The notes below the pieces were generated by a model that was not told where the DNA came from, did not search any database, and saw nothing but the letters and a program-made list of their open reading frames with translations. A DNA stretch of 64,000 nucleotides, from positions 1 through 64,000 of IMG/VR virus record IMGVR_UViG_3300023257_000007, one strand, 5' to 3'. Positions 7,406 to 47,047 of the stretch are shown in pieces. A program made the position numbers and the translations under genes. How positions within the stretch are numbered: the stretch's first letter is position 1; the number at the start of each line of letters is the position of its first letter.

Positions 7406-7642
7406 ATGAAAAAACAAAAAACATTTACAATTGATATGGATATTTGGGAAAAATTTAATGAAATAAGCAAACAAAAATCTATCAATAAATCTTTATTAAT
7501 AGAAAATCATTTAAGAGATATCATTTATTTAAACGAAAACCCAAAACATTTTATTATCGTTGGAGATGAAATAAAATTATTAAAATATTCATTAAATGAA
7601 AATGAAATTTATATATTAGACGCAAAACCAAATATAAAATAA
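7406..7642 (+). CDS. Ribbon-helix-helix DNA-binding protein
   Basis: MKKQKTFTID...WEKFNEISKQKSINKSLLIE pattern; TAATG overlap with the next gene. Confidence 0.65.
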   Translation: MKKQKTFTIDMDIWEKFNEISKQKSINKSLLIENHLRDIIYLNENPKHFIIVGDEIKLLKYSLNENEIYILDAKPNIK

Positions 7643-9219
7643 TGATATTAACCAAATCAGTCAAAGTTAAAGTGCATTCATCTATGGTAAAATACTATCA
7701 GAGTAAAGGATATGAATGCAAATATAAAGATATAATTGATATTAAAGTAAAAGATCTAAAACAAAAAAGTACAGTAATTGTCGAAGTTGAATGTGATATA
7801 TGTGGTGAAAAGAAAAATATACCATTGTTTAGATATAACAACAATTTTAATAATAAAAATATGTATGTTTGTTCAGCTTCTTGCGCACAAACAAAAATAA
7901 AATTAACTAAATTAGAAAATCATGGAGATGAAAATTTTTCAAATATTAAAAAACGAAAAGAAACATGCAAAGAAAGATACAACAACGAAAATTATAAGAA
8001 TATTGAAAAAAAGAAAGAGACAAATATAGAAAGATATGGAGTTGAACACGTGATAATGAATGAAAATATAAAAAATAAAAGACTAGAAACATATAAAAAA
8101 TTATATGGTGAAGAGCACCCAATGAAAAATAATGATATAATTCTAAAGAAAAAACAAACATCTAAAAATAAACATGGTGATAAAAATTATAACAACATAC
8201 AAAAAACACTCAAAACAATTAAAAATAAACAACTTCAAAATATTGAAAAATATAATATTAAAGCTATCAATTATCAAGATTTTCTTTTTGAAGTTGAATG
8301 TGATAAAGGACACAATTATAAAATATCATTCGATTTATTATACAAAAGACATAAATATAATGTAGAAAAATGTACAATATGTAATCCTATTGGAATCAAA
8401 TATTCAAATAGTGAGTATAATTTATTACAATTCATTAAAGAAAATTATAATGGTGAAATAATAAAAAATTCAAGAAAAATAATAAAACCGTATGAATTAG
8501 ACATATTTTTACCAAATTTAAATTTAGCATTTGAATATAATGGATTATGGTGGCACAATGAATTATATAAAGATAAAAATTATCACAAAACTAAAAGTGA
8601 TTTATGTGATAAAAATAATATACAATTAATACATATATGGGAAGATAACTGGATTTATAAACAAGATATAGTTAAATCTATGATATTAAATAAATTAGGT
8701 AAAACACTAAATAAAATATATGCAAGAAAATGTGAAATTAGAGAAATTAAAAATAATGATTTAATAAAACAATTTTTAAACAATAATCATATACAAGGTT
8801 TTGTTGGTTCGAGTGTAAAATTGGGTTTATATTACAATAATGAATTAACTTCTTTAATGACTTTTAAAAAAGATAATAATAATTTTGAATTAAACAGATT
8901 TTGTAATAAGTTAAATACTAATGTTATTGGTGGTGCATCTAAATTATTTAAATACTTTACTAAAAATTATAACTTTTATGAAATAAAAACATTTGCAGAT
9001 AGAACTTATTCAAATGGAAACTTATATTTTAAGATGAATTTTAAAATAGGTAAATTTATAAAACCAGATTATTATTATATTGTTAATGGTATTAGAAAAC
9101 ATAAATTTAATTTTAGAAAACAAAAAGATAACATAAAAACAGAACATGAAATTATGTTAGAAAAAAATATTTATAGAATATATGACGCAGGTAAATATAG
9201 ATTTACCTACTCATTATAA
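7642..9219 (+). CDS. Hef-like free-standing homing endonuclease
   Basis: CxxC ribbons, ERYGVE repeats, ELDIFLP..LAFEYNGLWWH nuclease motif, conserved GGASKLF C-domain. Confidence 0.8.
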   Translation: MILTKSVKVKVHSSMVKYYQSKGYECKYKDIIDIKVKDLKQKSTVIVEVECDICGEKKNIPLFRYNNNFNNKNMYVCSASCAQTKIKLTKLENHGDENFSNIKKRKETCKERYNNENYKNIEKKKETNIERYGVEHVIMNENIKNKRLETYKKLYGEEHPMKNNDIILKKKQTSKNKHGDKNYNNIQKTLKTIKNKQLQNIEKYNIKAINYQDFLFEVECDKGHNYKISFDLLYKRHKYNVEKCTICNPIGIKYSNSEYNLLQFIKENYNGEIIKNSRKIIKPYELDIFLPNLNLAFEYNGLWWHNELYKDKNYHKTKSDLCDKNNIQLIHIWEDNWIYKQDIVKSMILNKLGKTLNKIYARKCEIREIKNNDLIKQFLNNNHIQGFVGSSVKLGLYYNNELTSLMTFKKDNNNFELNRFCNKLNTNVIGGASKLFKYFTKNYNFYEIKTFADRTYSNGNLYFKMNFKIGKFIKPDYYYIVNGIRKHKFNFRKQKDNIKTEHEIMLEKNIYRIYDAGKYRFTYSL

Positions 9220-10003: not shown

Positions 10004-10104
10004 ATTTACATATTTATTTTCTATTATTATATATTAAAAAAAATTTTTCTTAATTCTGGTGTTTTTAAACCTAACCTTTTAATATATAAAGATAAATTAA
10101 ATAT

Positions 10105-11751
10105 ATGTTATTAACAAAGAATATTAAAATTAAAATAAATAATAGGTATATAAAATATTATCAAAATCTTGGATATCAGGTAAAAGGCGGTCAAGAATGT
10201 GAAATAAAAATAGAAGATTTATCAAAAAAAAGCCACGCTTTTGTTGATGTTAAATGTGATATATGTCAAGAAGAAAAAACAATTAAATATTATAATTATA
10301 CTGAAAATATACTAAATCAGGGTTTTTACACTTGTAAAAAATGTAAACATCATAAGACAAAAATCACAAATCTAGAGAAATATGGTGTAGAATGTACATT
10401 ACAATCTGATGATGTTTTAGAAAAGATAAAAAATAAAAACATAGAAAAATTTGGCACAGACCATTATTCAAAAACAAATGAATTTAAAGAAAAAATAAAA
10501 GAGACAAATCTAGAAAAATATGGTGTTGAAAGTAATATGCAATCAATCGAATTTAAGGAAAAATCTATATTATTTAATCTGAAAAGTTACGGTGTTGATC
10601 ATTATTCAAAGACTAATGAATTTAAAGAAAAAGTAAAAAAAACAAATTTAGAAAAATATGGTGTTGATCATTATTCAAAAACTGATGAATTCAAGGAGAA
10701 GTTGTCTAAAAACCATTTTTTAAAACTTAAAAAAGAAAACAACAATCTTAAAGAGATAAATGGTGATGAATATGTGATATATTGTGATAAATGTGATAAA
10801 GATTATACTATTCATAAATGGTTATATAAAAATAGAAAAAAGAAATATAAAACTAATACTTGTTTATATTGTAATCCTATAAATTCTTCTAAATCTGGAA
10901 TGGAATTAAAATTATTAGAATTTATAAAAGATAATTATAATGAAAAAATTGTTTATGGTAATAGAAAAATTATACCACCTAAAGAATTAGATATTTATTT
11001 ACCAAATTTAAAATTGGCATTTGAGTTTAATGGTGTATATTGGCACAACGAATTAAACAAACATAACAAATATCATTTAGAAAAAACAGAAAAATGTCTA
11101 GAAAAAGGAATACAATTAATTCATGTTTTTGAAGATGATTGGATTTATAAACAAGATATAGTAAAATCTAGAATTTTGAATTTAATTGGAAAATCTAAAA
11201 AAATATTTGCTCGAAAATGTGAAATTAAATTAGTCAATGATAATAAAGTTATTAGAAATTTTCTAGATGAAAATCATTTACAAGGGTTTGTAGGGAGCAA
11301 AATAAAATTGGGTTTGTATTATAATGATGAATTAGTAAGTTTAATGACTTTTGGAAATTTGAGAAAACCTTTAAATCAGTCAAAAAAGGATGGGTCATTT
11401 GAATTATTAAGATTTTGTAATAAATTGAGCATTTATGTTATTGGTGGTGCTTCAAAATTATTTAATTATTTCTTAAAAAACTATGAAATTTGTGAAATAA
11501 TAAGTTATGCGGATAGAAGTTGGAGTAATGGAAATTTATATGAAAAACTTGGTTTTGAATTTATACATAAAACACAACCTAACTATTATTATATAATAGG
11601 CAATCTTAGAAAACATAGATTTAATTTCAGGAAAGATAAATTAATTAAAGAAGGTTTTGATTCAAATAAAACCGAACATGAAATAATGTTAGAAAGGGAA
11701 ATATATCGAATATATGATAGCGGTAGTTTAAAATATAGTTATTTAATATAA
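10105..11751 (+). CDS. Hef-like free-standing homing endonuclease
   Basis: Paralog of 7642; KTNLEKYGV repeats; ELDIYLPNLKLAFEFNGVYWH. Confidence 0.8.
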   Translation: MLLTKNIKIKINNRYIKYYQNLGYQVKGGQECEIKIEDLSKKSHAFVDVKCDICQEEKTIKYYNYTENILNQGFYTCKKCKHHKTKITNLEKYGVECTLQSDDVLEKIKNKNIEKFGTDHYSKTNEFKEKIKETNLEKYGVESNMQSIEFKEKSILFNLKSYGVDHYSKTNEFKEKVKKTNLEKYGVDHYSKTDEFKEKLSKNHFLKLKKENNNLKEINGDEYVIYCDKCDKDYTIHKWLYKNRKKKYKTNTCLYCNPINSSKSGMELKLLEFIKDNYNEKIVYGNRKIIPPKELDIYLPNLKLAFEFNGVYWHNELNKHNKYHLEKTEKCLEKGIQLIHVFEDDWIYKQDIVKSRILNLIGKSKKIFARKCEIKLVNDNKVIRNFLDENHLQGFVGSKIKLGLYYNDELVSLMTFGNLRKPLNQSKKDGSFELLRFCNKLSIYVIGGASKLFNYFLKNYEICEIISYADRSWSNGNLYEKLGFEFIHKTQPNYYYIIGNLRKHRFNFRKDKLIKEGFDSNKTEHEIMLEREIYRIYDSGSLKYSYLI

Positions 11752-14692: not shown

Positions 14693-16504
14693 TTAATTCT
14701 TAAAAATGTATTTATAATTACCACTATTATATATTCTATAAATACCTCTTTCTATCATTATTTGATGTTCACTTTTATCTAAATCAAAACCTTCTTTAAC
14801 CAACACGTCTTTTCTATATCCAAACCTATATTTTCTCACACCATCTACTACATAATAATAATTTGGTTTAGAAATATGAGATAATTCAAAACCTAAATTT
14901 TCATATAATTTGCCATTTGAATGTGATCTATCTGCATAACTTATTATTTTTTTAAAAAAATAATTTTTAGTAAAATGTTTAAACAATTTTGAAGCACCAC
15001 CAATAACATTAGTATTTAACTTATTACAAAATCTTATAAGTTCAAATTCACCTTCTACACTAGAAGAATTTTGAGACTTTCTTTTTTTACCAAAAGTCAT
15101 TAAAGAAACTAACTCATTTTCATAATAAAGACCTAGTTTAATACTAGAACCAACAAAACCTTGTAAATGATTATCATCTAGAAATTTTCTTATCAATTTA
15201 TTATCTTCAATAACTTTAATTTCACATTTTCTTGCATAAATTCTATTTGGTGTTTTACCTATTTTGTTTAATATTATGGATTTAACTATGTCTTGTTTAT
15301 ACAACCAATCATCTTCCCAAATATGTGTTAGCTGAACACCTTTTTTAAAACAATTATCTGTTTTATTTAAATGATAATTATTATCTTTATTTAATTCGTT
15401 ATGCCAATACAAACCATTAAATTCAAAAGCTAATTTCAAATTTGGTAAATAAATATCTAATTCTAATGGTTTAATAACATCTCTATCTGATGTTTCAATG
15501 ACACCAGTATAATTTTCTTCAATAAAACTTAATAATTGTATTTCTAATCCTGATGTGTGTTGATTAATTGGGTTGCAAATAGTACACAATTCAGTTTTAC
15601 ATTTAACTCTATTTGAAAACAAGGATGAATTAATAATATAATCATGTCCTTTATCACATAATATTGTATATTCTTTATTATCAAAATCAATATTCAAAAA
15701 ATTTAAATAACTATAATTACTTAAAAGATATTTTTTAGTTCTTTTTCTATTATTCTCTTTAATATTTTTTATAACTTTTTCTGTTTGAAAATAATTTTCA
15801 ACACCATATCTTTCTAAGATTGTAGTTTTTCTTTTTTCTTTTAATTCATTAGAATATGATGGATTTTCAACACCATAATTTTCCATTAATGATTTTATTG
15901 ATTTCTCTCTAATTTCTTCTGATTGTTGAGGATACTCTACACCATACTTTTCTAAATTTGTTTTTTTAATTTTATCTTTTATTTCTTCTGATTCAAACGG
16001 ATTTTCAACACCATATTTTTCTAGATTTGTTTTGGATATTTTATCACGTATCTCTTTATTAGATAGAGAAAATTCAACACCATACTTTTCTAGATTTGTT
16101 TGTTTTTGCTTTCTTTTTACACACTCATTTTGAGTAAAATGTTCGACACCATATTTTTCCAAACTTGTTTTTTTAACTCTATCAACATATTCCTCAGTCT
16201 GTGTATAATATTCACTGCCATATTTTTCAAATGTTGTCTTTTTAACTTTTTCTTGAGCACACTTAGAACTACAAGCATAAAACCCACCATTATTAATATT
16301 TTTAACATATTTTTGATACATTAAATCCTTTTCATTATTACAAAAATCACATTTTACTTTTATTTTTACATGACTACCATCAGATAAATATTTAGGATGT
16401 ATATTTAAAATATCTCCCAATTGTACATCTTTCGAATATTCTTCTTTTAGTTTACTTAAATTTCTTTTTGTTACTTTAATTAATGTTTTTTCTGTTAAAA
16501 TCAT
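14693..16504 (-). CDS. Hef-like free-standing homing endonuclease
   Basis: Paralog of 7642/10105 with more KTNLEKYGVE repeats. Confidence 0.8.
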   Translation of the reverse strand: MILTEKTLIKVTKRNLSKLKEEYSKDVQLGDILNIHPKYLSDGSHVKIKVKCDFCNNEKDLMYQKYVKNINNGGFYACSSKCAQEKVKKTTFEKYGSEYYTQTEEYVDRVKKTSLEKYGVEHFTQNECVKRKQKQTNLEKYGVEFSLSNKEIRDKISKTNLEKYGVENPFESEEIKDKIKKTNLEKYGVEYPQQSEEIREKSIKSLMENYGVENPSYSNELKEKRKTTILERYGVENYFQTEKVIKNIKENNRKRTKKYLLSNYSYLNFLNIDFDNKEYTILCDKGHDYIINSSLFSNRVKCKTELCTICNPINQHTSGLEIQLLSFIEENYTGVIETSDRDVIKPLELDIYLPNLKLAFEFNGLYWHNELNKDNNYHLNKTDNCFKKGVQLTHIWEDDWLYKQDIVKSIILNKIGKTPNRIYARKCEIKVIEDNKLIRKFLDDNHLQGFVGSSIKLGLYYENELVSLMTFGKKRKSQNSSSVEGEFELIRFCNKLNTNVIGGASKLFKHFTKNYFFKKIISYADRSHSNGKLYENLGFELSHISKPNYYYVVDGVRKYRFGYRKDVLVKEGFDLDKSEHQIMIERGIYRIYNSGNYKYIFKN

Positions 16505-16598
16505 AGTTTGAACCTTATTTTTTGTTCGGCTACATAAACCTTTTCCTTATATATATTAAAATACATAATTGGTTTTTTAATATTAATATATAATTCAT

Positions 16599-25730: not shown

Positions 25731-26060
25731 ATGAAATTCTTTTACCTAATATTACTATTTTTACTATCCCTCACAATTTCCGCACAAAAAATTTACAAAG
25801 TTGATTATAAATATGATGCAGATATAAAAGTATATGTTGCTGATTATAAATATGATGCAGATTTGATTGTTTATATCGTAGATTATAAATATGATGCAAA
25901 TAAAGATGGTTTATGGTATTTCGTAAATTATAAATATGATGCAGATAAGACAATTTATTTTGTAGATTATAAATACGATGCAAATTTAATAATTTACTTC
26001 TGTGATTATAAGTATGATGTAGGTTGGAAAAATAAATCTAAAATACATTTATTAAGATAA
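25731..26060 (+). CDS. Secreted repeat protein (DUF6150-like)
   Basis: Signal peptide followed by six YKYDA[D/N] repeats. Confidence 0.7.
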   Translation: MKFFYLILLFLLSLTISAQKIYKVDYKYDADIKVYVADYKYDADLIVYIVDYKYDANKDGLWYFVNYKYDADKTIYFVDYKYDANLIIYFCDYKYDVGWKNKSKIHLLR

Positions 26061-26276: not shown

Positions 26277-26651
26277 TTAATATTCTCAAAGAATTCTTTA
26301 ACAGGTAATAATATATAACGTGTGCGCGCGCATGCGTATATAAAAAAATTTTTCAAAAGATTAAAATTTTTAAAAATTTTATTTCATTAATATTATCTTT
26401 AACGGTAATACTTATTTTCCTAAGAATAAAGAATTTTCAACTTATTGAATTTTTTAGTATAATTAGTATAATCTTTTAATTTTAGAAAAAAGTGACTTTT
26501 TAAGTCAAATATATAATTTTCACACTTTTATAAATTTTTAAAATTTTTAAACTTTTTAAAATTTTGAAAGTACAAGAAAATAGATTACGAAAAAATAATA
26601 TTTTTTTAAAGATTTTTCGAAATCAAAACGTTCTTTAAAATATTGTAAAAT

Positions 26652-27895
26652 ATAGTCTGTGCTTGGGCAGACGTTCATCTTCGGATGGAGCAGATAAAAC
26701 ATCGTAAGGTGTCGAAAGAGAGGAAGGTCACTTATTCTCGCCAATAGTCTTCGGATTATGGTCAATCTAAGCAAGTCTCATTTTTGTCTTGACCAACAAG
26801 ACAGCCTCAATAGAAAGGGGATAAGATGAAACAACGTGAGTAACGATCTTTGGTAAGAATAAGATGGCTCAATTGCCCGCAAGGGGAACAAAAGTTATCA
26901 AATATAGAATGGGGACATTCCAATATCGTTTAATCCACTCATTAAGTGTTCGTTGATAGATAAGAGATAGAATAGTAGTTCGAATGTGGAAAGTTAGAGC
27001 ATTATTCAGTTTCAAAGGTGTTGAAAGATGTCTTAACAAACGGCACAGTAAGTCCTCCGGGCTGAAACGCATACGAAGGGTCGTATTTTGTAAGGTGAAA
27101 CTTATGAATCGGTGGACAGGCACTTTGTGGTGATATCATTTTTTATTAGCTCACAATGGTAGAGCAGTAGTATTCTAACTAAAGGTAGATGGTTCAATTC
27201 CATCATAAAAAAAGCAAAGTCCCTGTCCGTCTGTTAAGTAAAGGTGCTTAAAACTTTACACTTCGGTGAATAAAGTGGATTCAAAGCTCGCAAGGTAGAG
27301 AATCTTTGATACAGTAGCCTCAACTTTTAACCCTAGCAGGTTATTAACGCCACGATAGTGGTGAGTGTACGCAAAATATCGAGTAACTTAATAGTACTAG
27401 TGATGTAACCACATAAAAAGTTACAGTACAGCTGGTGTACATAGTTGCCTTTCGAGGGATTATGTGGACAATTCAGGAACGAAGAATAGCAACTCTTTGA
27501 TAATCTGAAGAAAGCAAAACATATAATAAACTGTGTGTTTTACCAGTATGACAGTTTTTAGTCTCAAAATTGTTTCTCTATCAAGATAAAAACCTTGACG
27601 TGGTGATAGAGCTTTAAACTAATATTTATCAAATGTGAAAAAAGTAGTAGAAATTAAAAGACGCAACACGCAGCCCGTTCTCTGCGCTACTTCACAAAAA
27701 TGTGAACGATAAAAATCTTCACATTTAAATACACCAAGAATAACACCATCACTGTAGCCCTAAAGGAGTGATGTTGTCGCATAAAAACGATTAGTGTTAG
27801 TGTGTGTTTGAGAAGACGACGGGGGATTTCACAAAAGTAACATGAATCAAGTAGTGTGAAATAAGAAATTCCTCCAAGTTTTCTCGGAAAATTTT
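26652..27895 (+). ncRNA. Giant structured non-coding RNA (GOLLD/ROOL-like), ~1.25 kb; boundaries approximate
   Basis: No plus-strand ORF, GC clearly above flanks. UUCG hairpins at 26674, 26744, 27259, 27448; GNRA hairpins at 26699, 26876; embedded tRNA-like domain; abuts a tRNA array. Confidence 0.75.
27140..27212 (+). tRNA. tRNA-like domain embedded in the giant RNA (degenerate anticodon arm)
   Basis: TTTTTAT/ATAAAAA acceptor, GCTC/GAGC D-stem, GATGG-TTCAATT-CCATC T-arm, 6-nt anticodon loop. Confidence 0.65.
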
Positions 27896-27975
27896 TTTAT
27901 GCAAGAAATAATTTGTATATTGTCAAAAATAGAGAATAAATATTTAATATATAAAAAATAGTAAAAACAGAAACA

Positions 27976-28151: not shown

Positions 28152-28227
28152 GGTGGTTATAGTGTTAGTGGTAGCACGGCAGGTTGTGGTTCTGTTAGGA
28201 TGGATTCAAATTCCATTAATCACCCCA
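28152..28227 (+). tRNA. tRNA-His(GUG)
   Basis: Cloverleaf; GCAGG-TTGTGGT-TCTGT; C73. Confidence 0.88.
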
Positions 28228-28237
28228 AATTTAACAC

Positions 28238-28308
28238 AGGTCTATAGTGTAACGGTAGCATAAGTGATTCCAAACCACTTGGTCCGGGTTCAAATCCTGG
28301 TAGGCCTG
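28238..28308 (+). tRNA. tRNA-Trp(CCA)
   Basis: Cloverleaf; loop TTCCAAA; T-loop TTCAAAT. Confidence 0.9.
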
Positions 28309-28377
28309 CGAGAAGTTTAAATATGGTTAAATGAAGGATGGTTAAAAGGTAGAAAAATGAAATATTAATACAAATTT

Positions 28378-28450
28378 GGAACCGTGGTGTAGGTGGTCTG
28401 CACGATACTCTGAAGAAGTATAGGTACCCGTTCAACTCGGGTCGGTTCCA
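28378..28450 (+). tRNA. tRNA-Phe(GAA)
   Basis: GGAACCG/CGGTTCC acceptor; ATACT-CTGAAGA-AGTAT. Confidence 0.88.
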
Positions 28451-28527
28451 CTTTAAACTTTTAAATTTTAATATATATTAATGTGAAGAAAGAACCAGTT
28501 TTAATGAAAAATAATAAAAATTAACAA

Positions 28528-29274
28528 ATGAAAAAATATACACAATTTAGTAAATCTTTAGAAAAAATCAATCAAAATATGGAATTATTTGAAAAAGCTA
28601 TCGATCAAAATCAAAAAGAAAAAATAGATAGATATATTAATGCAAACAATTACAAAAAAGTTCTATCAGAACTAAAACAAATTATTTTTAATTTAAAAAA
28701 AGAAATTAAAAATTCCAATTTTGATGATTTCATTTATAAACAGAACAATAAAGATATAGAAATAATATATAATCCGACTATTCGTGGTATTTTAACCTAT
28801 TTAGATGGTAAAAGAGTAGAATTTGAATATGGAAAAGAAGAGAATCAACAAAAAATCTTAAACACTATCTATATTGATGGTGAAAGAGACCCATTTTTAG
28901 ATATAACTATTCAACCACCATTTAATCAGATACATATTAATAATGGTTTGCCAGTTTTTATGAAAGGTCTAGGATTAGGTAAAAAAGTTTACAAAAAACT
29001 AATTAAAGATTTTGGTTATCTTTCTTCTTTTAAAGGAATAAAACCTTCTATTGAAAGTGATTTGGTTTGGGATACTTTAGCTGATGATAGAGAATTGTTC
29101 ACTTTTGTGAATGATAACAATATCATTTGTTTTTGGAATGAAGTAGATTATGATATTATAATTATTAAATTGAAAGAATTTTACAAAATAAAAGGACAAA
29201 AAATCTTTGATAACGATTTTAAAAAGTTATATAACTTAACTGATGAAAAAATAGAACAAATAATTAATATATAA
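28528..29274 (+). CDS. Hypothetical protein, possible GNAT-like fold, CTS-like N-terminus
   Basis: MKKYTQF start; KGLGLGKKVY resembles the acetyl-CoA loop. Confidence 0.45.
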   Translation: MKKYTQFSKSLEKINQNMELFEKAIDQNQKEKIDRYINANNYKKVLSELKQIIFNLKKEIKNSNFDDFIYKQNNKDIEIIYNPTIRGILTYLDGKRVEFEYGKEENQQKILNTIYIDGERDPFLDITIQPPFNQIHINNGLPVFMKGLGLGKKVYKKLIKDFGYLSSFKGIKPSIESDLVWDTLADDRELFTFVNDNNIICFWNEVDYDIIIIKLKEFYKIKGQKIFDNDFKKLYNLTDEKIEQIINI

Positions 29275-29292
29275 AGAAAATCAATTTTAAAC

Positions 29293-29541
29293 ATGAAAAT
29301 TAAAAGATATAATGAATCATTAATTGATAATGATAATAACACTAGAGAAGATTTCAATGAAGAAATTGATGATCTAATATCAGAATTAAAGATAAGATAT
29401 AATAATTTTAATAATTTAATTGATTCATACAAAATAATAGAAAAAAGTAAAACAGAAGAATGGGAAAAAGTTAGAAATGAACTAAGAGGCGCATTTGATG
29501 GTTTTAAAAATGAATTAATACAAAAAATTAAAAAATTTTAA
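29293..29541 (+). CDS. Hypothetical protein, CTS-like N-terminus
   Basis: MKIKRYNES. Confidence 0.7.
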   Translation: MKIKRYNESLIDNDNNTREDFNEEIDDLISELKIRYNNFNNLIDSYKIIEKSKTEEWEKVRNELRGAFDGFKNELIQKIKKF

Positions 29542-29544
29542 ATA

Positions 29545-29619
29545 ATGATTATAATTAACATAAATAGTAAATCGAAAAAGAATAGTCGTCTGAAAACGGC
29601 TCGGAATTGTATTACCTAA
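29545..29619 (+). CDS. Leader peptide 2 (24 aa, Ser/Lys control codons)
   Basis: MIIININSKSKKNSRLKTARNCIT*, overlapping alternative hairpins. Confidence 0.68.
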   Translation: MIIININSKSKKNSRLKTARNCIT

Positions 29620-29641
29620 ATTTTTAGGTACAAAGAATTAC

Positions 29642-29671
29642 AAACCGAGTCTGAAAAGATTCGGTTTTTTT
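29642..29671 (+). terminator. Attenuator terminator upstream of tRNA-Lys/Ser array
   Basis: AAACCGAGTC-TGAAAA-GATTCGGTTT plus T-tract, ending 3 nt before tRNA-Lys. Confidence 0.85.
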
Positions 29672-29673
29672 AT

Positions 29674-29751
29674 TGGCCATTAGCTCAGTAGGTTTAGAGC
29701 ATCTGCCTTTTAAGCAGAGAGTCCAGGGTTCGATCCCCTGATGGCCAACCA
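29674..29751 (+). tRNA. tRNA-Lys(UUU), CCA encoded
   Basis: Perfect cloverleaf; TCTGC-CTTTTAA-GCAGA. Confidence 0.95.
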
Positions 29752-29753
29752 AT

Positions 29754-29826
29754 GGATCTGTAGCTCAGTTGGTAGAGCTTCTGCCTTTTAAGCAGAAAGT
29801 CCAGGGTTCGAGTCCGACTAGGTCCA
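29754..29826 (+). tRNA. tRNA-Lys(UUU) second copy with mispaired T-stem (possible pseudogene)
   Basis: Same anticodon arm; T-stem CAGGG vs CCGAC pairs at only 2 of 5 positions. Confidence 0.65.
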
Positions 29827-29830
29827 CTAA

Positions 29831-29945
29831 GGCTTATAACAAATAGGTTGTATTTATAGAGCATTTGTCGGGTTACCGCATGTCACTAAAATGTATATTT
29901 TAAGAGTTACTAGAGATATATGAGGTTCGAATCCTTAATAAGCCA
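29831..29945 (+). pseudogene. Elongated tRNA-like element
   Basis: GGCTTAT/ATAAGCC acceptor and TGAGG-TTCGAAT-CCTTA T-arm around an oversized, non-canonical core. Confidence 0.5.
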
Positions 29946-29949
29946 CTAT

Positions 29950-30033
29950 GGAAAGCGTCCGGTTGGACGAGGGGCTACTCTTGAAAAGTAGTAATGGGTT
30001 ACACCATTAGGGGTTCGAATCCCTTGCTTTCCG
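29950..30033 (+). tRNA. tRNA-Ser(UGA)
   Basis: CTACT-CTTGAAA-AGTAG; long variable arm; G73. Confidence 0.92.
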
Positions 30034-30037
30034 CTAT

Positions 30038-30125
30038 GGAAGAGTACCCAAGTTGGTGAAGGGGCTGGTTTGCTAAACCAGTAGGTCTGAAATACGGCGC
30101 GTGGGTTCGAGCCCCACTTCTTCCG
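30038..30125 (+). tRNA. tRNA-Ser(GCU)
   Basis: CTGGT-TTGCTAA-ACCAG; long variable arm; G73. Confidence 0.92.
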
Positions 30126-30173
30126 CAATTAGGTTTGAAACTCAGTTGGTGACCTACTAAGAAAGATATTTCA

Positions 30174-32428: not shown

Positions 32429-32510
32429 ATATATGTCTAATAACATATCCTAATTTTTGACTTATTAGAAAATTTCTCGTATATTATTATAAATACTAAA
32501 ACTTCAAATC

Positions 32511-33818
32511 ATGAGAAATATACAAAAATTATCAGAAAAAGAATTAATAGTACATTTAAAATCTATCTATAATAAACAGATAGATATTTATGATAAATTT
32601 GAAAAAACAGGTGAAATTGAACCAATTATTACCGATTTTGATGATCAAGATGCATATAAATATTTTATGCAATATGCAATCTTTAAAACTCACCCAAACG
32701 CAATAGTAAAATTTAAATTTTTTAACCGTGGAAAACATAAATTTCCAGTCGGTTCAGATTATCATATTAAAAAACAAATAGAATCTATGAAAAATCTTAG
32801 ATTCACTCCTGAAATAGAAAGATCATTTAGAAAAAAATTTTCAAATATGAAAGGTGAATCTTATTTTGATGAATCTTTTTATGGTTTTTTAAGAAGTTAT
32901 AGATACGATCCATCTGAAGTTAAAGTAACTCAAACAGGAGAAGATATCGAAATAGAAATAACTGGTTCTTGGTTAAAAACAATTTATTGGGAAACACAAA
33001 TAATGCCGATTTTAACAGAAACTTGGTATATGTTAACTGATCAATATAAAAATATTCATAATTTTGATCATCTATATGATACACACAGAGACAAATATCG
33101 AAGTTTTATAACAGCCGAATCTAATATTGCAGAATTTGGTTTAAGAAGAAGATATTCAAAACTAATACAAGAATTTATCAATATACATTTTATGTGGGAA
33201 TCACCAGCTAGATATATTGGTACGTCTAATTGTATGTTCGCTAGAAAATTTAATGTTAAAGCCATTGGAACACAAGCTCATGAATGGATAATGTTTCATG
33301 CCGCAAAATATGGACCAGAACTAGCAAATAAGATATCTTTAGAAAATTGGGTTAAAGTTTACAGAGGAGAATTAGGTATTGCGTTATCTGATACTTATGG
33401 TACAGACAATTTCTTAAAATCATTTGATACTTTACATAGTAAATTATTTGATGGTGTTAGATGGGATTCTGGTGATTTTAAATTATTTACTGATAAAATA
33501 ATTGGACACTATAAATCATATGGAATTAATCCTAAATCCAAAACAATTGTCTATTCTGATGGTATAAATTCATTTTTAAAAATACGAGATATTATAAGAT
33601 ATGCAAGTGATAAAATTAAATGCACGTTAGGAATTGGTACTTATTTAACAAATGATATTGGTGTACCAACTATGAATATTGTTATTAAAATGACAGAAGC
33701 TAAACCTGAAAAAATGGATTGGAGATATTGTATAAAGACATCTGATTCATCTGGTAAATATACTTATACTGACAAAAAAACATTAAACAGATACTTAGAA
33801 GATTTGAATATAAATTAA
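32511..33818 (+). CDS. pncB: Nicotinate phosphoribosyltransferase
   Basis: TDFDDQDAYK, EFGLRRR, GTQAHEW, SDTY, GVRWDSGD, YSDG, GIGTYLTND. Confidence 0.92.
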   Translation: MRNIQKLSEKELIVHLKSIYNKQIDIYDKFEKTGEIEPIITDFDDQDAYKYFMQYAIFKTHPNAIVKFKFFNRGKHKFPVGSDYHIKKQIESMKNLRFTPEIERSFRKKFSNMKGESYFDESFYGFLRSYRYDPSEVKVTQTGEDIEIEITGSWLKTIYWETQIMPILTETWYMLTDQYKNIHNFDHLYDTHRDKYRSFITAESNIAEFGLRRRYSKLIQEFINIHFMWESPARYIGTSNCMFARKFNVKAIGTQAHEWIMFHAAKYGPELANKISLENWVKVYRGELGIALSDTYGTDNFLKSFDTLHSKLFDGVRWDSGDFKLFTDKIIGHYKSYGINPKSKTIVYSDGINSFLKIRDIIRYASDKIKCTLGIGTYLTNDIGVPTMNIVIKMTEAKPEKMDWRYCIKTSDSSGKYTYTDKKTLNRYLEDLNIN

Positions 33819-45341: not shown

Positions 45342-46943
45342 TTAAAAGTTTAATGAATATTTTATATTACCACTGTTATATATTCTATAAATACCTCTTT
45401 CTAACATTATTTCGTGTTCACTTTTATTAGGATCATAACCTTCTCTAACTAAAACATCTTTTCTAAAATTATACCTATATAATCGTTTTAAATTTTTACC
45501 ATCAAAATAATGATAATTCGGTTTTGTGTTATGAACGAATTTAAATTCCAATTTTTCATATAGATTTCCTTTACTCCAGCTTCTATCAGCATAAGTAATT
45601 ATTTCACCCGGATTATAATTTCTGATAAAATATTTAAATAATTTTGATGCACCACCAACAACATTAATATTTAATTTGTTACAAAACCTTAACAATTCAT
45701 ACTCTCCTTCTATACTTTTAGACCCCATTAATTTTCTTTTTTTACCAAAGGTCATTAGAGATACTAATTCATCTTCATAATAAAGACCTATTTTAACAAA
45801 AGAACCAACAAAACCTTGAAGATGATTATCATTTAAAAAATTTCTAATCAATTTATTATCTATTATCTCTTTAATTATAGTTTTTCTAGCATATATTTTA
45901 TCAGACTTTCCAATCATATTTAATATTCTAGACTTGACAATTTCTTTTTGGTTAAACCATTCATCTTCCCAAATATGTATTAATTGAACACCTTTTTTTA
46001 AACAATTGTTTGTTTTATTTAAATGATAATCCTTATCCTTATAAAGTTCTGAATGCCAATACAAACCATTAAATTCAAAAGCTAGATTTAAATCTGGTAA
46101 ATAAATATCTAATTCTTTTCCATCCAAGATCTCTTTATCACTTGTTATTATTTCATAATTATAGTTTTCTTTAATAAAATTCACGATTTCTAATTCTTTA
46201 CCTGAAATCTTATAATCTAATGTATTACAAACTGTGCATAATATTGTTTTTTGTATTTTATATCTTTGATATAAATTTTTGCTATTAATATTAAAATAAT
46301 GATCTTTACCACAATCACATTTAACATCTATCGTTCGATCAGTATTTAAAATATAATCTGTTATATTATATTCCGATAATTTAAATAATATATCTTTTTC
46401 CCACCTTTTATATGTTAACAAATAATATGATTCTGTTTGTGTATACCATTCTTTTCCATATTTTTCAAGATTAGTTTTCTTTATTTTCTCTCTAATTTCA
46501 TATGAAGAAAGTATCTCTTCCACGCCATATTTTTCAAGATTTGTTTTTTTAATTTTTTCTTTGACATCTTTATCTAATAATGTACAAGTAACGCCATATT
46601 TCTTGAGGTTTGTTTGTTTTGTTTTATCTTTTATTTCTTTTATGTGTTGTGGATTTTCAACGCCATATTTTTCTAACATTGTATTTTTTCTTTTAATAGA
46701 AGAACATTTTTTACAACTATAAAAACCTTGTCTTTTTTTATTTTCTAAATATTTATGATATCTTAGTTGTTTTTCATCTGAACATATCTCACAAACAGCA
46801 ATTACTTTAACATGTGAATTTTGTGGCAAATCATTAACATCAATGTCCAATGTTTCACCATTATTACAAACATAATTTTTAGATCTATAATATGTTACAT
46901 TACGATATGTTATATTAACATCAATTCTACTATTTTTAATCAT
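45342..46943 (-). CDS. Hef-like free-standing homing endonuclease
   Basis: Fourth paralog; ELDIYLPDLNLAFEFNGLYWH. Confidence 0.8.
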   Translation of the reverse strand: MIKNSRIDVNITYRNVTYYRSKNYVCNNGETLDIDVNDLPQNSHVKVIAVCEICSDEKQLRYHKYLENKKRQGFYSCKKCSSIKRKNTMLEKYGVENPQHIKEIKDKTKQTNLKKYGVTCTLLDKDVKEKIKKTNLEKYGVEEILSSYEIREKIKKTNLEKYGKEWYTQTESYYLLTYKRWEKDILFKLSEYNITDYILNTDRTIDVKCDCGKDHYFNINSKNLYQRYKIQKTILCTVCNTLDYKISGKELEIVNFIKENYNYEIITSDKEILDGKELDIYLPDLNLAFEFNGLYWHSELYKDKDYHLNKTNNCLKKGVQLIHIWEDEWFNQKEIVKSRILNMIGKSDKIYARKTIIKEIIDNKLIRNFLNDNHLQGFVGSFVKIGLYYEDELVSLMTFGKKRKLMGSKSIEGEYELLRFCNKLNINVVGGASKLFKYFIRNYNPGEIITYADRSWSKGNLYEKLEFKFVHNTKPNYHYFDGKNLKRLYRYNFRKDVLVREGYDPNKSEHEIMLERGIYRIYNSGNIKYSLNF

Positions 46944-47047
46944 TTTACAAAAGTCCCATTTTTACCATTGCTTATTATATATTAAAAAACACAAGTGAAA
47001 AATAAATTTATATATATAATAATGAATAAAAATCATTTAGTTTAAAA

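What the first reader, a model, noticed from the sequence alone, without database searches (positions are those of the whole stretch)
27114..27228. tRNA-like domain grafted onto a stem of the giant RNA, sharing the TTCTAAC loop of the CUA tRNA
Seen: GGACAGG-C-ACTTTG (27114-27127) pairs with CAAAGT-C-CCTGTCC (27215-27228) and encloses a cloverleaf. D- and T-arms are intact, the acceptor stem is all A-U, there is no CCA, and the anticodon loop is 6 nt. It contains TTCTAAC (27173-79), identical to the loop at 55184-90. Known: some GOLLD RNAs carry tRNAs in variable loops. Inference: a tRNA mimic or decoy for anticodon nucleases, an RNase P processing signal, or a relic of the suppressor family.
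Basis: partly seen in the sequence, partly recalled or inferred. Interest (0 to 1): 0.66.

Follow-up and report, generated by a model that had tools for sequence, protein, structure and literature searches.

The report
Degenerate tRNA inside a phage GOLLD RNA
The cloverleaf is real, but it is the already documented tRNA carried in the variable linker of a phage GOLLD RNA, here a degenerate copy that probably no longer decodes, so this is a new example of a known feature.

Summary
Positions 27140-27212 form a tRNA cloverleaf (Rfam tRNA 45.4 bits; ARAGORN also calls it). It sits inside a roughly 900-nt GOLLD RNA (RF02032, full-length, E 1e-24, 93.9 bits, below the curated 150) of a 345-kb, 25% GC jumbo phage, just upstream of a tRNA island.

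The tRNA lies in the GOLLD variable linker (J13/15), where embedded tRNAs and pseudo-tRNAs are already published. I found 27 more GOLLD loci with a tRNA(-like) element at the same spot, with many different anticodons.

GGACAGG/CCUGUCC is a conserved, strongly covarying GOLLD pseudoknot helix.
ACUUUG/CAAAGU is not conserved. It reuses the P13 strand and the near-invariant GCAAAGUC motif.
- **Identity:** the tRNA is 72% identical to a linker tRNA-Arg(UCU) of another GOLLD but only 54% to the window's CUA suppressor. TTCTAAC is a common heptamer here.

The best reading is an Arg-UCU-type tRNA that lost one loop base and probably no longer decodes. As a class, linker tRNAs have A-U-rich acceptor stems and hold every off-size anticodon loop found. 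This is a known kind with a new member, and its function is unresolved.

The parts
26650..27545 (+). Whole GOLLD RNA, about 900 nt (5' domain plus 3' domain); the ends are approximate
   Evidence: A 33-45% GC island in a 12-25% GC background. The 3' domain is matched by Rfam. The 5' part (about 26701-27025) resembles the regions just upstream of the 3' domains of three other GOLLDs (nhmmer E 5e-7 to 1e-5). Sigma-70-like hexamers lie at 26434-26472, no more than expected by chance.
27073..27541 (+). GOLLD 3' domain (Rfam RF02032 model positions 1-416)
   Evidence: cmscan gives 93.9 bits, E 1.3e-24, a full-length match, below the curated gathering score of 150.
27073..27080 (+). P13 5' strand (ACGAAGGG)
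   Evidence: Pairs with 27121-27128 in the Rfam alignment. Duplex energy is -6.5 to -8.4 kcal/mol with one G.A mismatch. The same helix covaries in the other GOLLDs at -8 to -16 kcal/mol.
27081..27113 (+). P14 hairpin (contains the conserved GUAUUUUGUA)
   Evidence: Rfam alignment. The same hairpin is seen in all related loci.
27114..27120 (+).
   Evidence: Pairs with 27222-27228. There are 16 distinct covarying versions in other GOLLDs. Cognate duplexes average -11.9 kcal/mol against -3.3 for non-cognate pairs.
27121..27128 (+).
   Evidence: The alternative pairing with CAAAGU (-6.2 to -9.3 kcal/mol) exists in this sequence and has only weak counterparts (0.4 to -3.4 kcal/mol) in the 15 other tRNA-bearing helix versions tested.
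27140..27212 (+). Embedded tRNA or pseudo-tRNA. Acceptor 27140-46/27205-11; D arm 27149-65; anticodon stem 27168-71/27178-81 with 6-nt loop 27172-77; variable loop 27183-87; T arm 27188-27204; discriminator A at 27212; no CCA
   Evidence: Rfam tRNA 45.4 bits. ARAGORN score 102.4, the lowest of 23 embedded calls. It is 72% identical to the linker tRNA-Arg(UCU) of L094.
27213..27221 (+).
   Evidence: Aligned to the capitalised AAAGCAAAAGUC of the Rfam consensus. Near-invariant in all GOLLDs collected, although it was part of my search pattern for most of them. Kretsch et al. 2025 report that J13/15 forms an intermolecular kissing loop with L20.
27222..27228 (+). 3' strand of the linker-closing helix (CCUGUCC)
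28153..30126 (+). Same-strand tRNA island downstream (His, Trp, Phe, Lys x2, Ser x2), the usual GOLLD neighbourhood

Best explanation
This is the linker tRNA of a phage GOLLD RNA. The roughly 900-nt GOLLD is transcribed as one piece.

In its 3' domain, helix P13 and a second helix (GGACAGG/CCUGUCC, probably P15) form a pseudoknot. That pseudoknot clamps both ends of the variable linker J13/15. The cloverleaf occupies almost the whole linker, from 12 nt after the P13 strand to the base directly before the conserved AGCAAAGUC motif.

Cryo-EM of another GOLLD places this linker on the inner face of a 12- to 14-mer RNA cage. By analogy, each subunit would hold one tethered tRNA-shaped domain pointing into the lumen (inferred).

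This copy derives from the Arg-UCU type of linker tRNA and has degenerated:

- One base is missing from the anticodon loop, leaving 6 nt.
- The acceptor stem is A-U only. Its 3' strand coincides with the A-rich tract that GOLLDs conserve in front of GCAAAGUC.
- There is no G1 and no CCA.

It therefore most likely does not decode. If it acts at all, it acts through its tRNA shape (elbow, acceptor-T minihelix) rather than its anticodon.

Shown: identity, position, the conserved clamp helix, and kinship with other linker tRNAs. Inferred: location inside a cage and loss of decoding.
For: - **GOLLD match:** full-length RF02032 match with the tRNA falling in the model's unpaired variable stretch.
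- **tRNA call:** Rfam and ARAGORN both call it.
- **Same position elsewhere:** 27 further GOLLD loci from IMG/VR carry a tRNA(-like) element at the identical position.
- **Clamp helix:** it covaries across 16 versions, -11.9 kcal/mol cognate against -3.3 non-cognate. P13 also covaries.
- **Closest tRNA:** a GOLLD linker tRNA-Arg(UCU) at 72%, with an identical AGGUA variable loop, against 54% to the window's CUA tRNA.
- **Loop register:** the covariance model reads U33-UCU-A37 with position 38 deleted.
- **Class trend:** 23 embedded tRNAs against 311 free-standing tRNAs of the same loci have 1.6 vs 4.1 acceptor G-C pairs (ranges 0-3 vs 2-7) and 42% vs 54% GC. All 6 off-size anticodon loops are embedded ones. 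Four more embedded elements are too degenerate for ARAGORN.
[quoted passage not shown] A tRNA-Phe lies in J13/15 (PMC12990946). A pseudo-tRNA within a mycobacterial GOLLD was not detected as a separate RNA on Northern blots (PMC6582537).
Against: - A second register gives a canonical 7-nt loop UUCUAAC with U33, CUA and A37, so a suppressor reading is not excluded.
- At 45.4 bits the tRNA scores as well as the window's tRNA-His (45.9), so by score alone it is not an obvious pseudogene.
- The only close relatives of this GOLLD are 100% identical contigs. Conservation of the 6-nt loop within its own lineage could not be tested.
- My collection of linker tRNAs required an intact T arm, so it is biased toward well-kept copies.
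- Cage formation has been shown only for other GOLLDs, and this one is divergent (93.9 bits).
Confidence: 0.68

Rival explanations
1. It is a working amber-suppressor tRNA (anticodon CUA). It would be co-transcribed with GOLLD, cut out by RNase P and RNase Z, given CCA by the host enzyme, and used to read TAG.
For: ARAGORN calls anticodon CUA in a 7-nt loop with U33 and A37. The same genome carries a good CUA tRNA at 55154-55226 (60.9 bits), so amber suppression seems to be part of this phage's biology.
Against: - In that register the anticodon stem has 2 Watson-Crick pairs, 1 G.U and 2 mismatches. The covariance model and RNAfold both prefer the other register.
- It is only 54% identical to the real CUA tRNA and 72% to an Arg-UCU linker tRNA.
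- The acceptor stem is A-U only and there is no G1.
- TAG ends 6 of 66 long ORFs in the window, with only 0-34 open codons beyond it. Recoding TAG adds little ORF length.
Confidence: 0.1
2. It is a tethered decoy. Twelve to fourteen tRNA mimics per cage would soak up host tRNA-targeting defence enzymes such as anticodon nucleases, or other tRNA-binding proteins.
For: - Linker tRNAs keep the tRNA shape, while their anticodons differ widely and can flip within a lineage. Examples are UGG to UGA as the only difference in 72 nt between L023 and L054, and GUU to UCU in L041 against its relatives.
- Off-size loops occur only in embedded copies.
- Kretsch et al. speculate on caged or exposed tRNAs.
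Against: No direct evidence exists. A decoy for an anticodon nuclease should keep a canonical 7-nt loop, which this copy lacks. Anticodon drift is equally expected under relaxed selection. No defence or anti-defence gene was linked to it here.
Confidence: 0.12
3. It is a processing signal. RNase P and RNase Z would recognise the cloverleaf and cut the GOLLD precursor into a 5' piece and a 3' piece. The clamp helix and tertiary contacts would hold the pieces together, and a tRNA-sized fragment would be released.
For: - The elbow and the acceptor-T minihelix, which are what RNase P and RNase Z recognise (established knowledge), are intact.
- Some linker tRNAs encode CCA and G1 and look fully processable: L094, L096 and L078. 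L102 also encodes CCA, but has no G1 and a 6-nt anticodon loop.
- The clamp helix would keep the halves together.
Against: - In a mycobacterial GOLLD the embedded pseudo-tRNA was not seen as a separate RNA on Northern blots (PMC6582537).
- The weak A-U acceptor stem is absent from the minimum-energy fold.
- No RNase P RNA was found in the window.
- The cryo-EM studies used unprocessed single-chain transcripts that assemble well.
Confidence: 0.15
4. It is a neutral relic. The linker tolerates insertions, a tRNA gene from the adjacent array was captured, and it is now decaying with no role of its own.
For: - GOLLDs sit in tRNA islands.
- tRNA-less GOLLDs exist with short unrelated linkers: L001, L002, L069, L072.
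- There is a graded series from intact copies to copies ARAGORN cannot call.
Against: - All 23 called linker tRNAs share the A-U-rich acceptor stem (0-3 G-C pairs), whereas none of the 311 neighbouring tRNAs has fewer than 2. This points to a class-wide constraint or common descent, not independent recent captures.
- In one lineage tRNA identity roughly tracks scaffold identity, 64-82% against 76-85%, so the module is kept over substantial divergence.
Confidence: 0.2

Closest known systems
GOLLD RNAs with a tRNA or pseudo-tRNA in the variable linker J13/15
   Same: - Same host RNA family, same insertion point, and same phage tRNA-island context.
- The same conserved flanks are present (P13, the clamp helix, and the A-tract with GCAAAGUC).
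- Sources read here are Kretsch et al. 2025 (PMC12286853), the 2026 review (PMC12990946) and Behra et al. 2019 (PMC6582537). Weinberg et al. 2009 and Morgado et al. 2020 are cited there or known to me, but I could not read them.
- Non-canonical anticodon loops also occur in the Mycobacterium-like copies I recovered (L082 group), matching the published 'pseudo tRNA' label.
   Different: - The host GOLLD is divergent (93.9 bits, under Rfam's 150 cut-off) and lies in a 25% GC, 345-kb jumbo phage.
- The acceptor stem is entirely A-U and abuts the GCAAAGUC motif directly, absorbing the A-tract.
- The P13 3' strand can alternatively pair with GCAAAGU, extending the clamp helix to 13 of 14 bp.
Free-standing phage amber-suppressor tRNA (CUA), such as the one at 55154-55226
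   Same: It shares the heptamer UUCUAAC and generic tRNA features. Both are on the + strand of the same phage.
   Different: Overall identity is 54%. The 55154 tRNA has a G-C-rich acceptor stem, a 7-nt loop closed by a good stem, and 57% GC. The embedded one has 30% GC, and its stem pairs poorly in the CUA register.
Viral and cellular tRNA-like structures that act by shape, not decoding (plant-virus 3' TLS, tmRNA tRNA-like domain, mascRNA)
   Same: A tRNA-shaped module is embedded in a larger RNA. The elbow is conserved, the anticodon is dispensable or altered, and the module may be recognised by tRNA enzymes.
   Different: Those modules are terminal, and their interactions with CCA-adding enzyme, aminoacyl-tRNA synthetases or RNase P are proven. 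This one is internal, has no CCA, and has no demonstrated interaction. The comparison is functional analogy only, from my own knowledge.
ROOL RNA variable linker
   Same: ROOL is another phage-borne cage-forming RNA found near tRNA islands. It has a disordered variable linker facing the cage interior.
   Different: The sequence and fold are unrelated. I saw no report of tRNAs inside ROOL linkers in the papers read.

Membership tests
GOLLD RNA (Rfam RF02032) | Significant full-length match to the 3'-domain covariance model | tested here: met
   Model positions 1-416 of 416, E 1.3e-24. The score of 93.9 bits is below Rfam's curated gathering cut-off of 150, so automatic Rfam annotation misses it.
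GOLLD RNA (Rfam RF02032) | Conserved P13/P14 hairpin, linker-closing pseudoknot helix, and the A-tract with GCAAAGUC motif | tested here: met
   All are present at 27073-27228. The helices covary with 16 or more other GOLLD versions.
GOLLD RNA (Rfam RF02032) | Large variable 5' domain, total size over 800 nt, phage location next to tRNA genes | tested here: met
   GC island about 26650-27545. The 5' part is weakly similar to other GOLLD 5' domains. Terminase and primase genes are in the window, and a tRNA island starts at 28153.
GOLLD RNA (Rfam RF02032) | Assembly into a multimeric RNA cage | not testable with these tools
   Known from cryo-EM of env-38 and S. agalactiae GOLLD only.
GOLLD linker-embedded tRNA | tRNA cloverleaf located between the P13 3' strand and the GCAAAGUC motif (J13/15) | tested here: met
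   The tRNA at 27140-27212 lies between 27128 and 27213. The position is the same in 27 other loci.
tRNA (Rfam RF00005) | Cloverleaf score above the gathering threshold | tested here: met
   45.4 bits against 29.
tRNA (functional, decoding) | 7-nt anticodon loop closed by a 5-bp stem | tested here: not met
   Two registers exist. One gives a 6-nt loop with a 4-bp stem. The other gives a 7-nt loop with only 3 of 5 stem pairs.
tRNA (functional, decoding) | Processing to a free tRNA with a CCA end, and aminoacylation | not testable with these tools
   No CCA is encoded: the discriminator A is followed by AGC. Processing and charging need experiments.
Amber-suppressor tRNA family of this phage | Sequence kinship with the bona fide CUA tRNA beyond generic tRNA conservation | tested here: not met
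   54% identity, ranking below eleven GOLLD linker tRNAs and one Lys tRNA of the window. The shared heptamer occurs 22 times in the window.

The most novel reading that the evidence does not exclude
GOLLD linker tRNAs, this one included, may be a distinct, vertically inherited class of non-decoding tRNA mimics rather than ordinary tRNA genes that happen to sit there. Their A-U-rich acceptor stems are fused to the conserved A-tract, their anticodon loops can be off-size, and their anticodons drift. They would be displayed in 12 to 14 copies on the inner wall of an RNA cage, as multivalent bait or a docking handle for host tRNA-binding enzymes such as anticodon nucleases, RNase P/Z or modification enzymes. 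In this phage, the extra ACUUUG/CAAAGU pairing would also make a switch between a closed 14-bp stem and the P13-plus-kissing-loop form used for cage assembly.
Probability: 0.12. Interest if true: 0.75.

Novelty: new member of a known kind. Interest (0 to 1): 0.3.

Why it matters
GOLLD is one of the largest bacterial and phage non-coding RNAs. It forms striking RNA-only cages, and its function is unknown. The tRNA that some members carry in the inward-facing linker is one of the few clues to what the cage handles.

This window adds a divergent GOLLD that Rfam's cut-off misses, in a very A-T-rich jumbo phage, with a visibly degenerate linker tRNA. The comparison made here gives three concrete handles for experiments on whether the module is cargo, bait or relic:

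- Linker tRNAs as a class have weak A-U acceptor stems.
- They monopolise the off-size anticodon loops found in these loci.
- Their anticodons can change within a lineage.

On its own, though, the finding does not change what is known.

Tried and rejected
**Searches for closer relatives of this GOLLD**
- blastn of 26600-27900 against 50,697 deposited phage genomes found no match.
- The neighbouring primase-like protein found only the two contigs that are 100% identical to the window.
- The one metagenome scan gave the same two contigs plus a canonical tRNA-less GOLLD. Conservation of the 6-nt loop and of the inner stem within this lineage therefore could not be tested.
None matched my GOLLD profile by nhmmer. 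That A-T-rich profile also missed G-C-rich GOLLDs earlier, so this is a weak negative.

**Structure questions left open**
- I could not find which loop (L20) pairs with the GCAAAGUC motif. Complementarity searches gave no consistent site.
- The inner stem has an analogue (ACUUUGC/GCAAAGU) in the tRNA-less L001/L069/L072 lineage and possibly L002. Two of about 17 lineages is roughly what chance gives for a 6-mer in a 100-nt linker.

**Ideas rejected**
- TAG recoding: no sign of it in this window.
- A phage RNase P RNA: no Rfam match at E <= 0.05.
- A chance cloverleaf: rejected on score and on homologous position.

**Not obtained or not done**
- Weinberg 2009 and Morgado 2020 are not held in the library. 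What I say about them comes from papers that cite them or from my own knowledge.
- I did not use the count of structure pairs, because it needs a long typed structure string. Covariation was measured by a cognate versus non-cognate duplex test in a script instead.

Full report
**What is at the coordinates**

The sequence facts in the finding are correct.
- 27114-27127 and 27215-27228 are complementary at 13 of 14 positions, with one C.C mismatch.
- Between them, 27140-27212 is called a tRNA by ARAGORN and by Rfam's tRNA model at 45.4 bits against a threshold of 29.
- The D and T arms are canonical, the acceptor stem is seven A-U pairs, and no CCA follows.
- In isolation, 27105-27237 folds at -37.8 kcal/mol, z -4.1 against shuffles.

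**The host RNA**

At Rfam's curated thresholds only tRNAs are reported. With E-value reporting, 27073-27541 matches the GOLLD model RF02032 over its full length (1-416) at 93.9 bits, E 1.3e-24. That is under the curated 150-bit cut-off.

A 33-45% GC island in a 12-25% GC background runs from about 26650 to 27545. Its 5' part is weakly but significantly similar to the regions just upstream of three other GOLLD 3' domains. The RNA is therefore a roughly 900-nt, divergent GOLLD.

The window is 100% identical to two IMG/VR and JGI contigs of 344.6 and 348.2 kb. It has 24.8% GC. It encodes a large terminase, a primase-like protein and an SbcC-like protein. This is a jumbo phage, with a same-strand tRNA island starting at 28153.

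**Where the tRNA sits**

In the Rfam alignment the tRNA fills the long unpaired variable stretch between the first hairpin (P13/P14) and the conserved AAAGCAAAAGUC motif. This is the GOLLD 'linker' or J13/15.

The literature already records tRNAs there.
- Kretsch et al. [quoted passage not shown] They also report that the linker is disordered and faces the interior of the 14-mer cage (PMC12286853).
- A 2026 review notes a tRNA-Phe in J13/15 of a Mycolicibacterium GOLLD pointing inward (PMC12990946).
- Behra et al. 2019 found a predicted pseudo-tRNA inside a mycobacterial GOLLD and could not detect it as a separate RNA by Northern blot (PMC6582537).

**Comparison across homologues**

I scanned IMG/VR for a T-arm consensus followed within 8-30 nt by AGCAAAGTC or AGCAAAAGTC. 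I then filtered with a GOLLD profile or Rfam. This gave 27 further GOLLD loci with a tRNA(-like) element at exactly this position.

ARAGORN calls Met, Pro, Asn, Glu, His, Gln, Lys and Arg(UCU) anticodons, and a Pro-type body bearing UGA. So the position is a recurrent, homologous tRNA site.

*Outer half.* GGACAGG (27114-20) with CCUGUCC (27222-28) is a conserved GOLLD helix.
- In every locus, the 6-9 nt just before the conserved GCAC pair with the 6-9 nt just after GCAAAGU(C).
- There are 16 different sequence versions, for example GAGACA/UGUCUC, GGAACA/UGUUCC, GAACUA/UAGUUC and CAGUCGCA/UGCGACUG.
- Cognate duplexes average -11.9 kcal/mol against -3.3 (sd 2.9) for non-cognate combinations.
- Its 5' strand lies in the bulge between P14 and the P13 3' strand, so it forms a pseudoknot with P13. 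A covariance model cannot represent a pseudoknot.
- From the published names 'J13/15' and 'L15' I infer that this helix is P15. I could not see the figures.

*Inner half.* ACUUUG with CAAAGU is not conserved.
- Its 5' arm is the P13 3' strand. That strand pairs with ACGAAG at 27073-78 in the Rfam alignment, and P13 covaries in the other GOLLDs.
- Its 3' arm is the near-invariant J13/15 motif.
- Fifteen other tRNA-bearing helix versions show only weak complementarity at these positions (0.4 to -3.4 kcal/mol against -6.2 here).
- An analogous ACUUUGC/GCAAAGU pairing occurs in one tRNA-less lineage. That frequency is near chance expectation.
- In this sequence P13 is unusually weak (-6.5 to -8.4 kcal/mol) and the alternative is comparable (-9.3). 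A lineage-specific alternative conformer cannot be excluded.

**Which tRNA is it**

Two registers exist.
- The covariance model and RNAfold pair UAGU with ACUA and leave the 6-nt loop AUUCUA. This reads as U33-UCU-A37 with position 38 missing.
- ARAGORN takes the 7-nt loop UUCUAAC (anticodon CUA), but with a stem of 2 Watson-Crick pairs, 1 G.U and 2 mismatches.

In a joint alignment the closest tRNA is the linker tRNA-Arg(UCU) of L094 at 72% identity. It has the same AGGUA variable loop, a UUCUAA loop core and an A-U-rich acceptor. Other linker tRNAs follow at 57-65%. The window's own CUA tRNA is at 54%.

UCU is the commonest anticodon among the linker tRNAs found (L040, L041, L094, L096/L078). 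TTCTAAC occurs 22 times in the window against 12.7 expected.

I conclude that this is an Arg-UCU-type linker tRNA that lost one A from the loop/stem junction, not a relative of the suppressor. TAG behaves as a normal stop in this window.

**Class properties of linker tRNAs**

I have not seen these in the papers read. I compared 23 embedded tRNAs with 311 free-standing tRNAs in the same loci.

| Property | Embedded (23) | Free-standing (311) |
|---|---|---|
| Acceptor G-C pairs, mean (range) | 1.6 (0-3) | 4.1 (2-7) |
| Overall GC | 42% | 54% |
| G at +1 | 35% | 64% |
| Median ARAGORN score | 111.2 | 113.9 |
| Off-size anticodon loops flagged by ARAGORN | 6 | 0 |

- The score difference gives p of about 0.001, but the samples are not independent.
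- The 6 ARAGORN-flagged off-size loops come from two lineages. The window, which ARAGORN does not flag but the covariance model reads as 6 nt, would be a third.
- Four further embedded elements are too degenerate to be called.
- Within one GOLLD lineage, tRNA identity (64-82%) roughly tracks scaffold identity (76-85%), yet one member has UCU instead of GUU.
- L023 and L054 differ in their 72-nt tRNA only at the anticodon, UGG against UGA.
- In the window, the acceptor 3' strand plus discriminator (AUAAAAA-A) aligns to the A-rich tract that GOLLDs conserve in front of GCAAAGUC. This explains the all-A-U stem.
- My collection required an intact T arm, so T-arm conservation is not evidence.

**Mechanism and alternatives**

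The most likely picture is a tRNA-shaped side domain. It is held at its base by the P13/P15 pseudoknot, projects into the cage lumen, and no longer decodes.

Whether it is bait, a processing site or a relic cannot be decided by computation. The rivals and their refuting experiments are listed in their own sections. No RNase P RNA is detectable in the window.

**Verdict**

It is a new, divergent member of a known kind and is of modest interest by itself.

Noticed in passing
window 55154-55226 (+): A well-formed tRNA with anticodon CUA (amber suppressor; Rfam 60.9 bits, G-C-rich acceptor, one C.C mismatch at the base of the anticodon stem). Yet TAG ends 6 of 66 long ORFs in this window with short open stretches beyond it, so there is no sign of TAG recoding here. 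Recoding may be confined to genes elsewhere in the 345-kb genome.
   Followed up: partly
window 27596-27895 (+): A second GC-richer island (34-41%) lies right after the GOLLD. It has no ORF above 49 aa and no Rfam match, and it folds at z -3.0 against shuffles. It may be another structured RNA or a 3' extension of the GOLLD transcript. There is one weak nhmmer hit near the GOLLD of L091 (E 0.007).
   Followed up: partly
window 7606-9219 (+), 10096-11751 (+), 14693-16546 (-), 45342-46961 (-): Four paralogous 537-617-aa ORFs all match the same PHROG homing/HNH endonuclease families (phrog_3339, E 1e-107 to 1e-135). That is an unusual density of large homing-endonuclease-like genes.
   Followed up: no
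L023:1632-1703 vs L054:7215-7286: Two closely related GOLLDs carry linker tRNAs that are identical in 71 of 72 nt. The single difference changes the anticodon from UGG (Pro) to UGA on the same tRNA body.
   Followed up: partly
27 GOLLD loci (e.g. L094:382-457, L102:3556-3630, L082:4622-4693): As a class, GOLLD linker tRNAs have A-U-rich acceptor stems (0-3 G-C pairs, while none of the 311 neighbouring tRNAs has fewer than 2). They also hold all 6 off-size anticodon loops found. Four of them (L094, L096, L078, L102) nevertheless encode a 3' CCA.
   Followed up: yes
window 27168-27181: If the U27171-A27178 pair opens, the loop becomes 8 nt (UAUUCUAA). It would then present UCUA, the quadruplet complement of UAGA, as in +1 frameshift-suppressor tRNAs. 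Only a 3-bp stem would remain, so this is unlikely, and it was not tested.
   Followed up: no
window 25731-26060 (+): A 109-aa ORF matches DUF6150 (E 6e-38). Its DNA contains internal direct repeats of about 77-80% identity (25792-26028), seen as self-hits in blastn.
   Followed up: no
window 32493-33818 (+): A nicotinate phosphoribosyltransferase gene (NAPRTase N-terminal and catalytic domains, E 3e-48). This is an NAD-salvage auxiliary gene, located close to the tRNA island.
   Followed up: no
window 29949-30033 (+): The tRNA-Ser(UGA) gives a sub-threshold hit to the tRNA-Sec model (37.5 bits against 47). This is most likely just its long variable arm.
   Followed up: no
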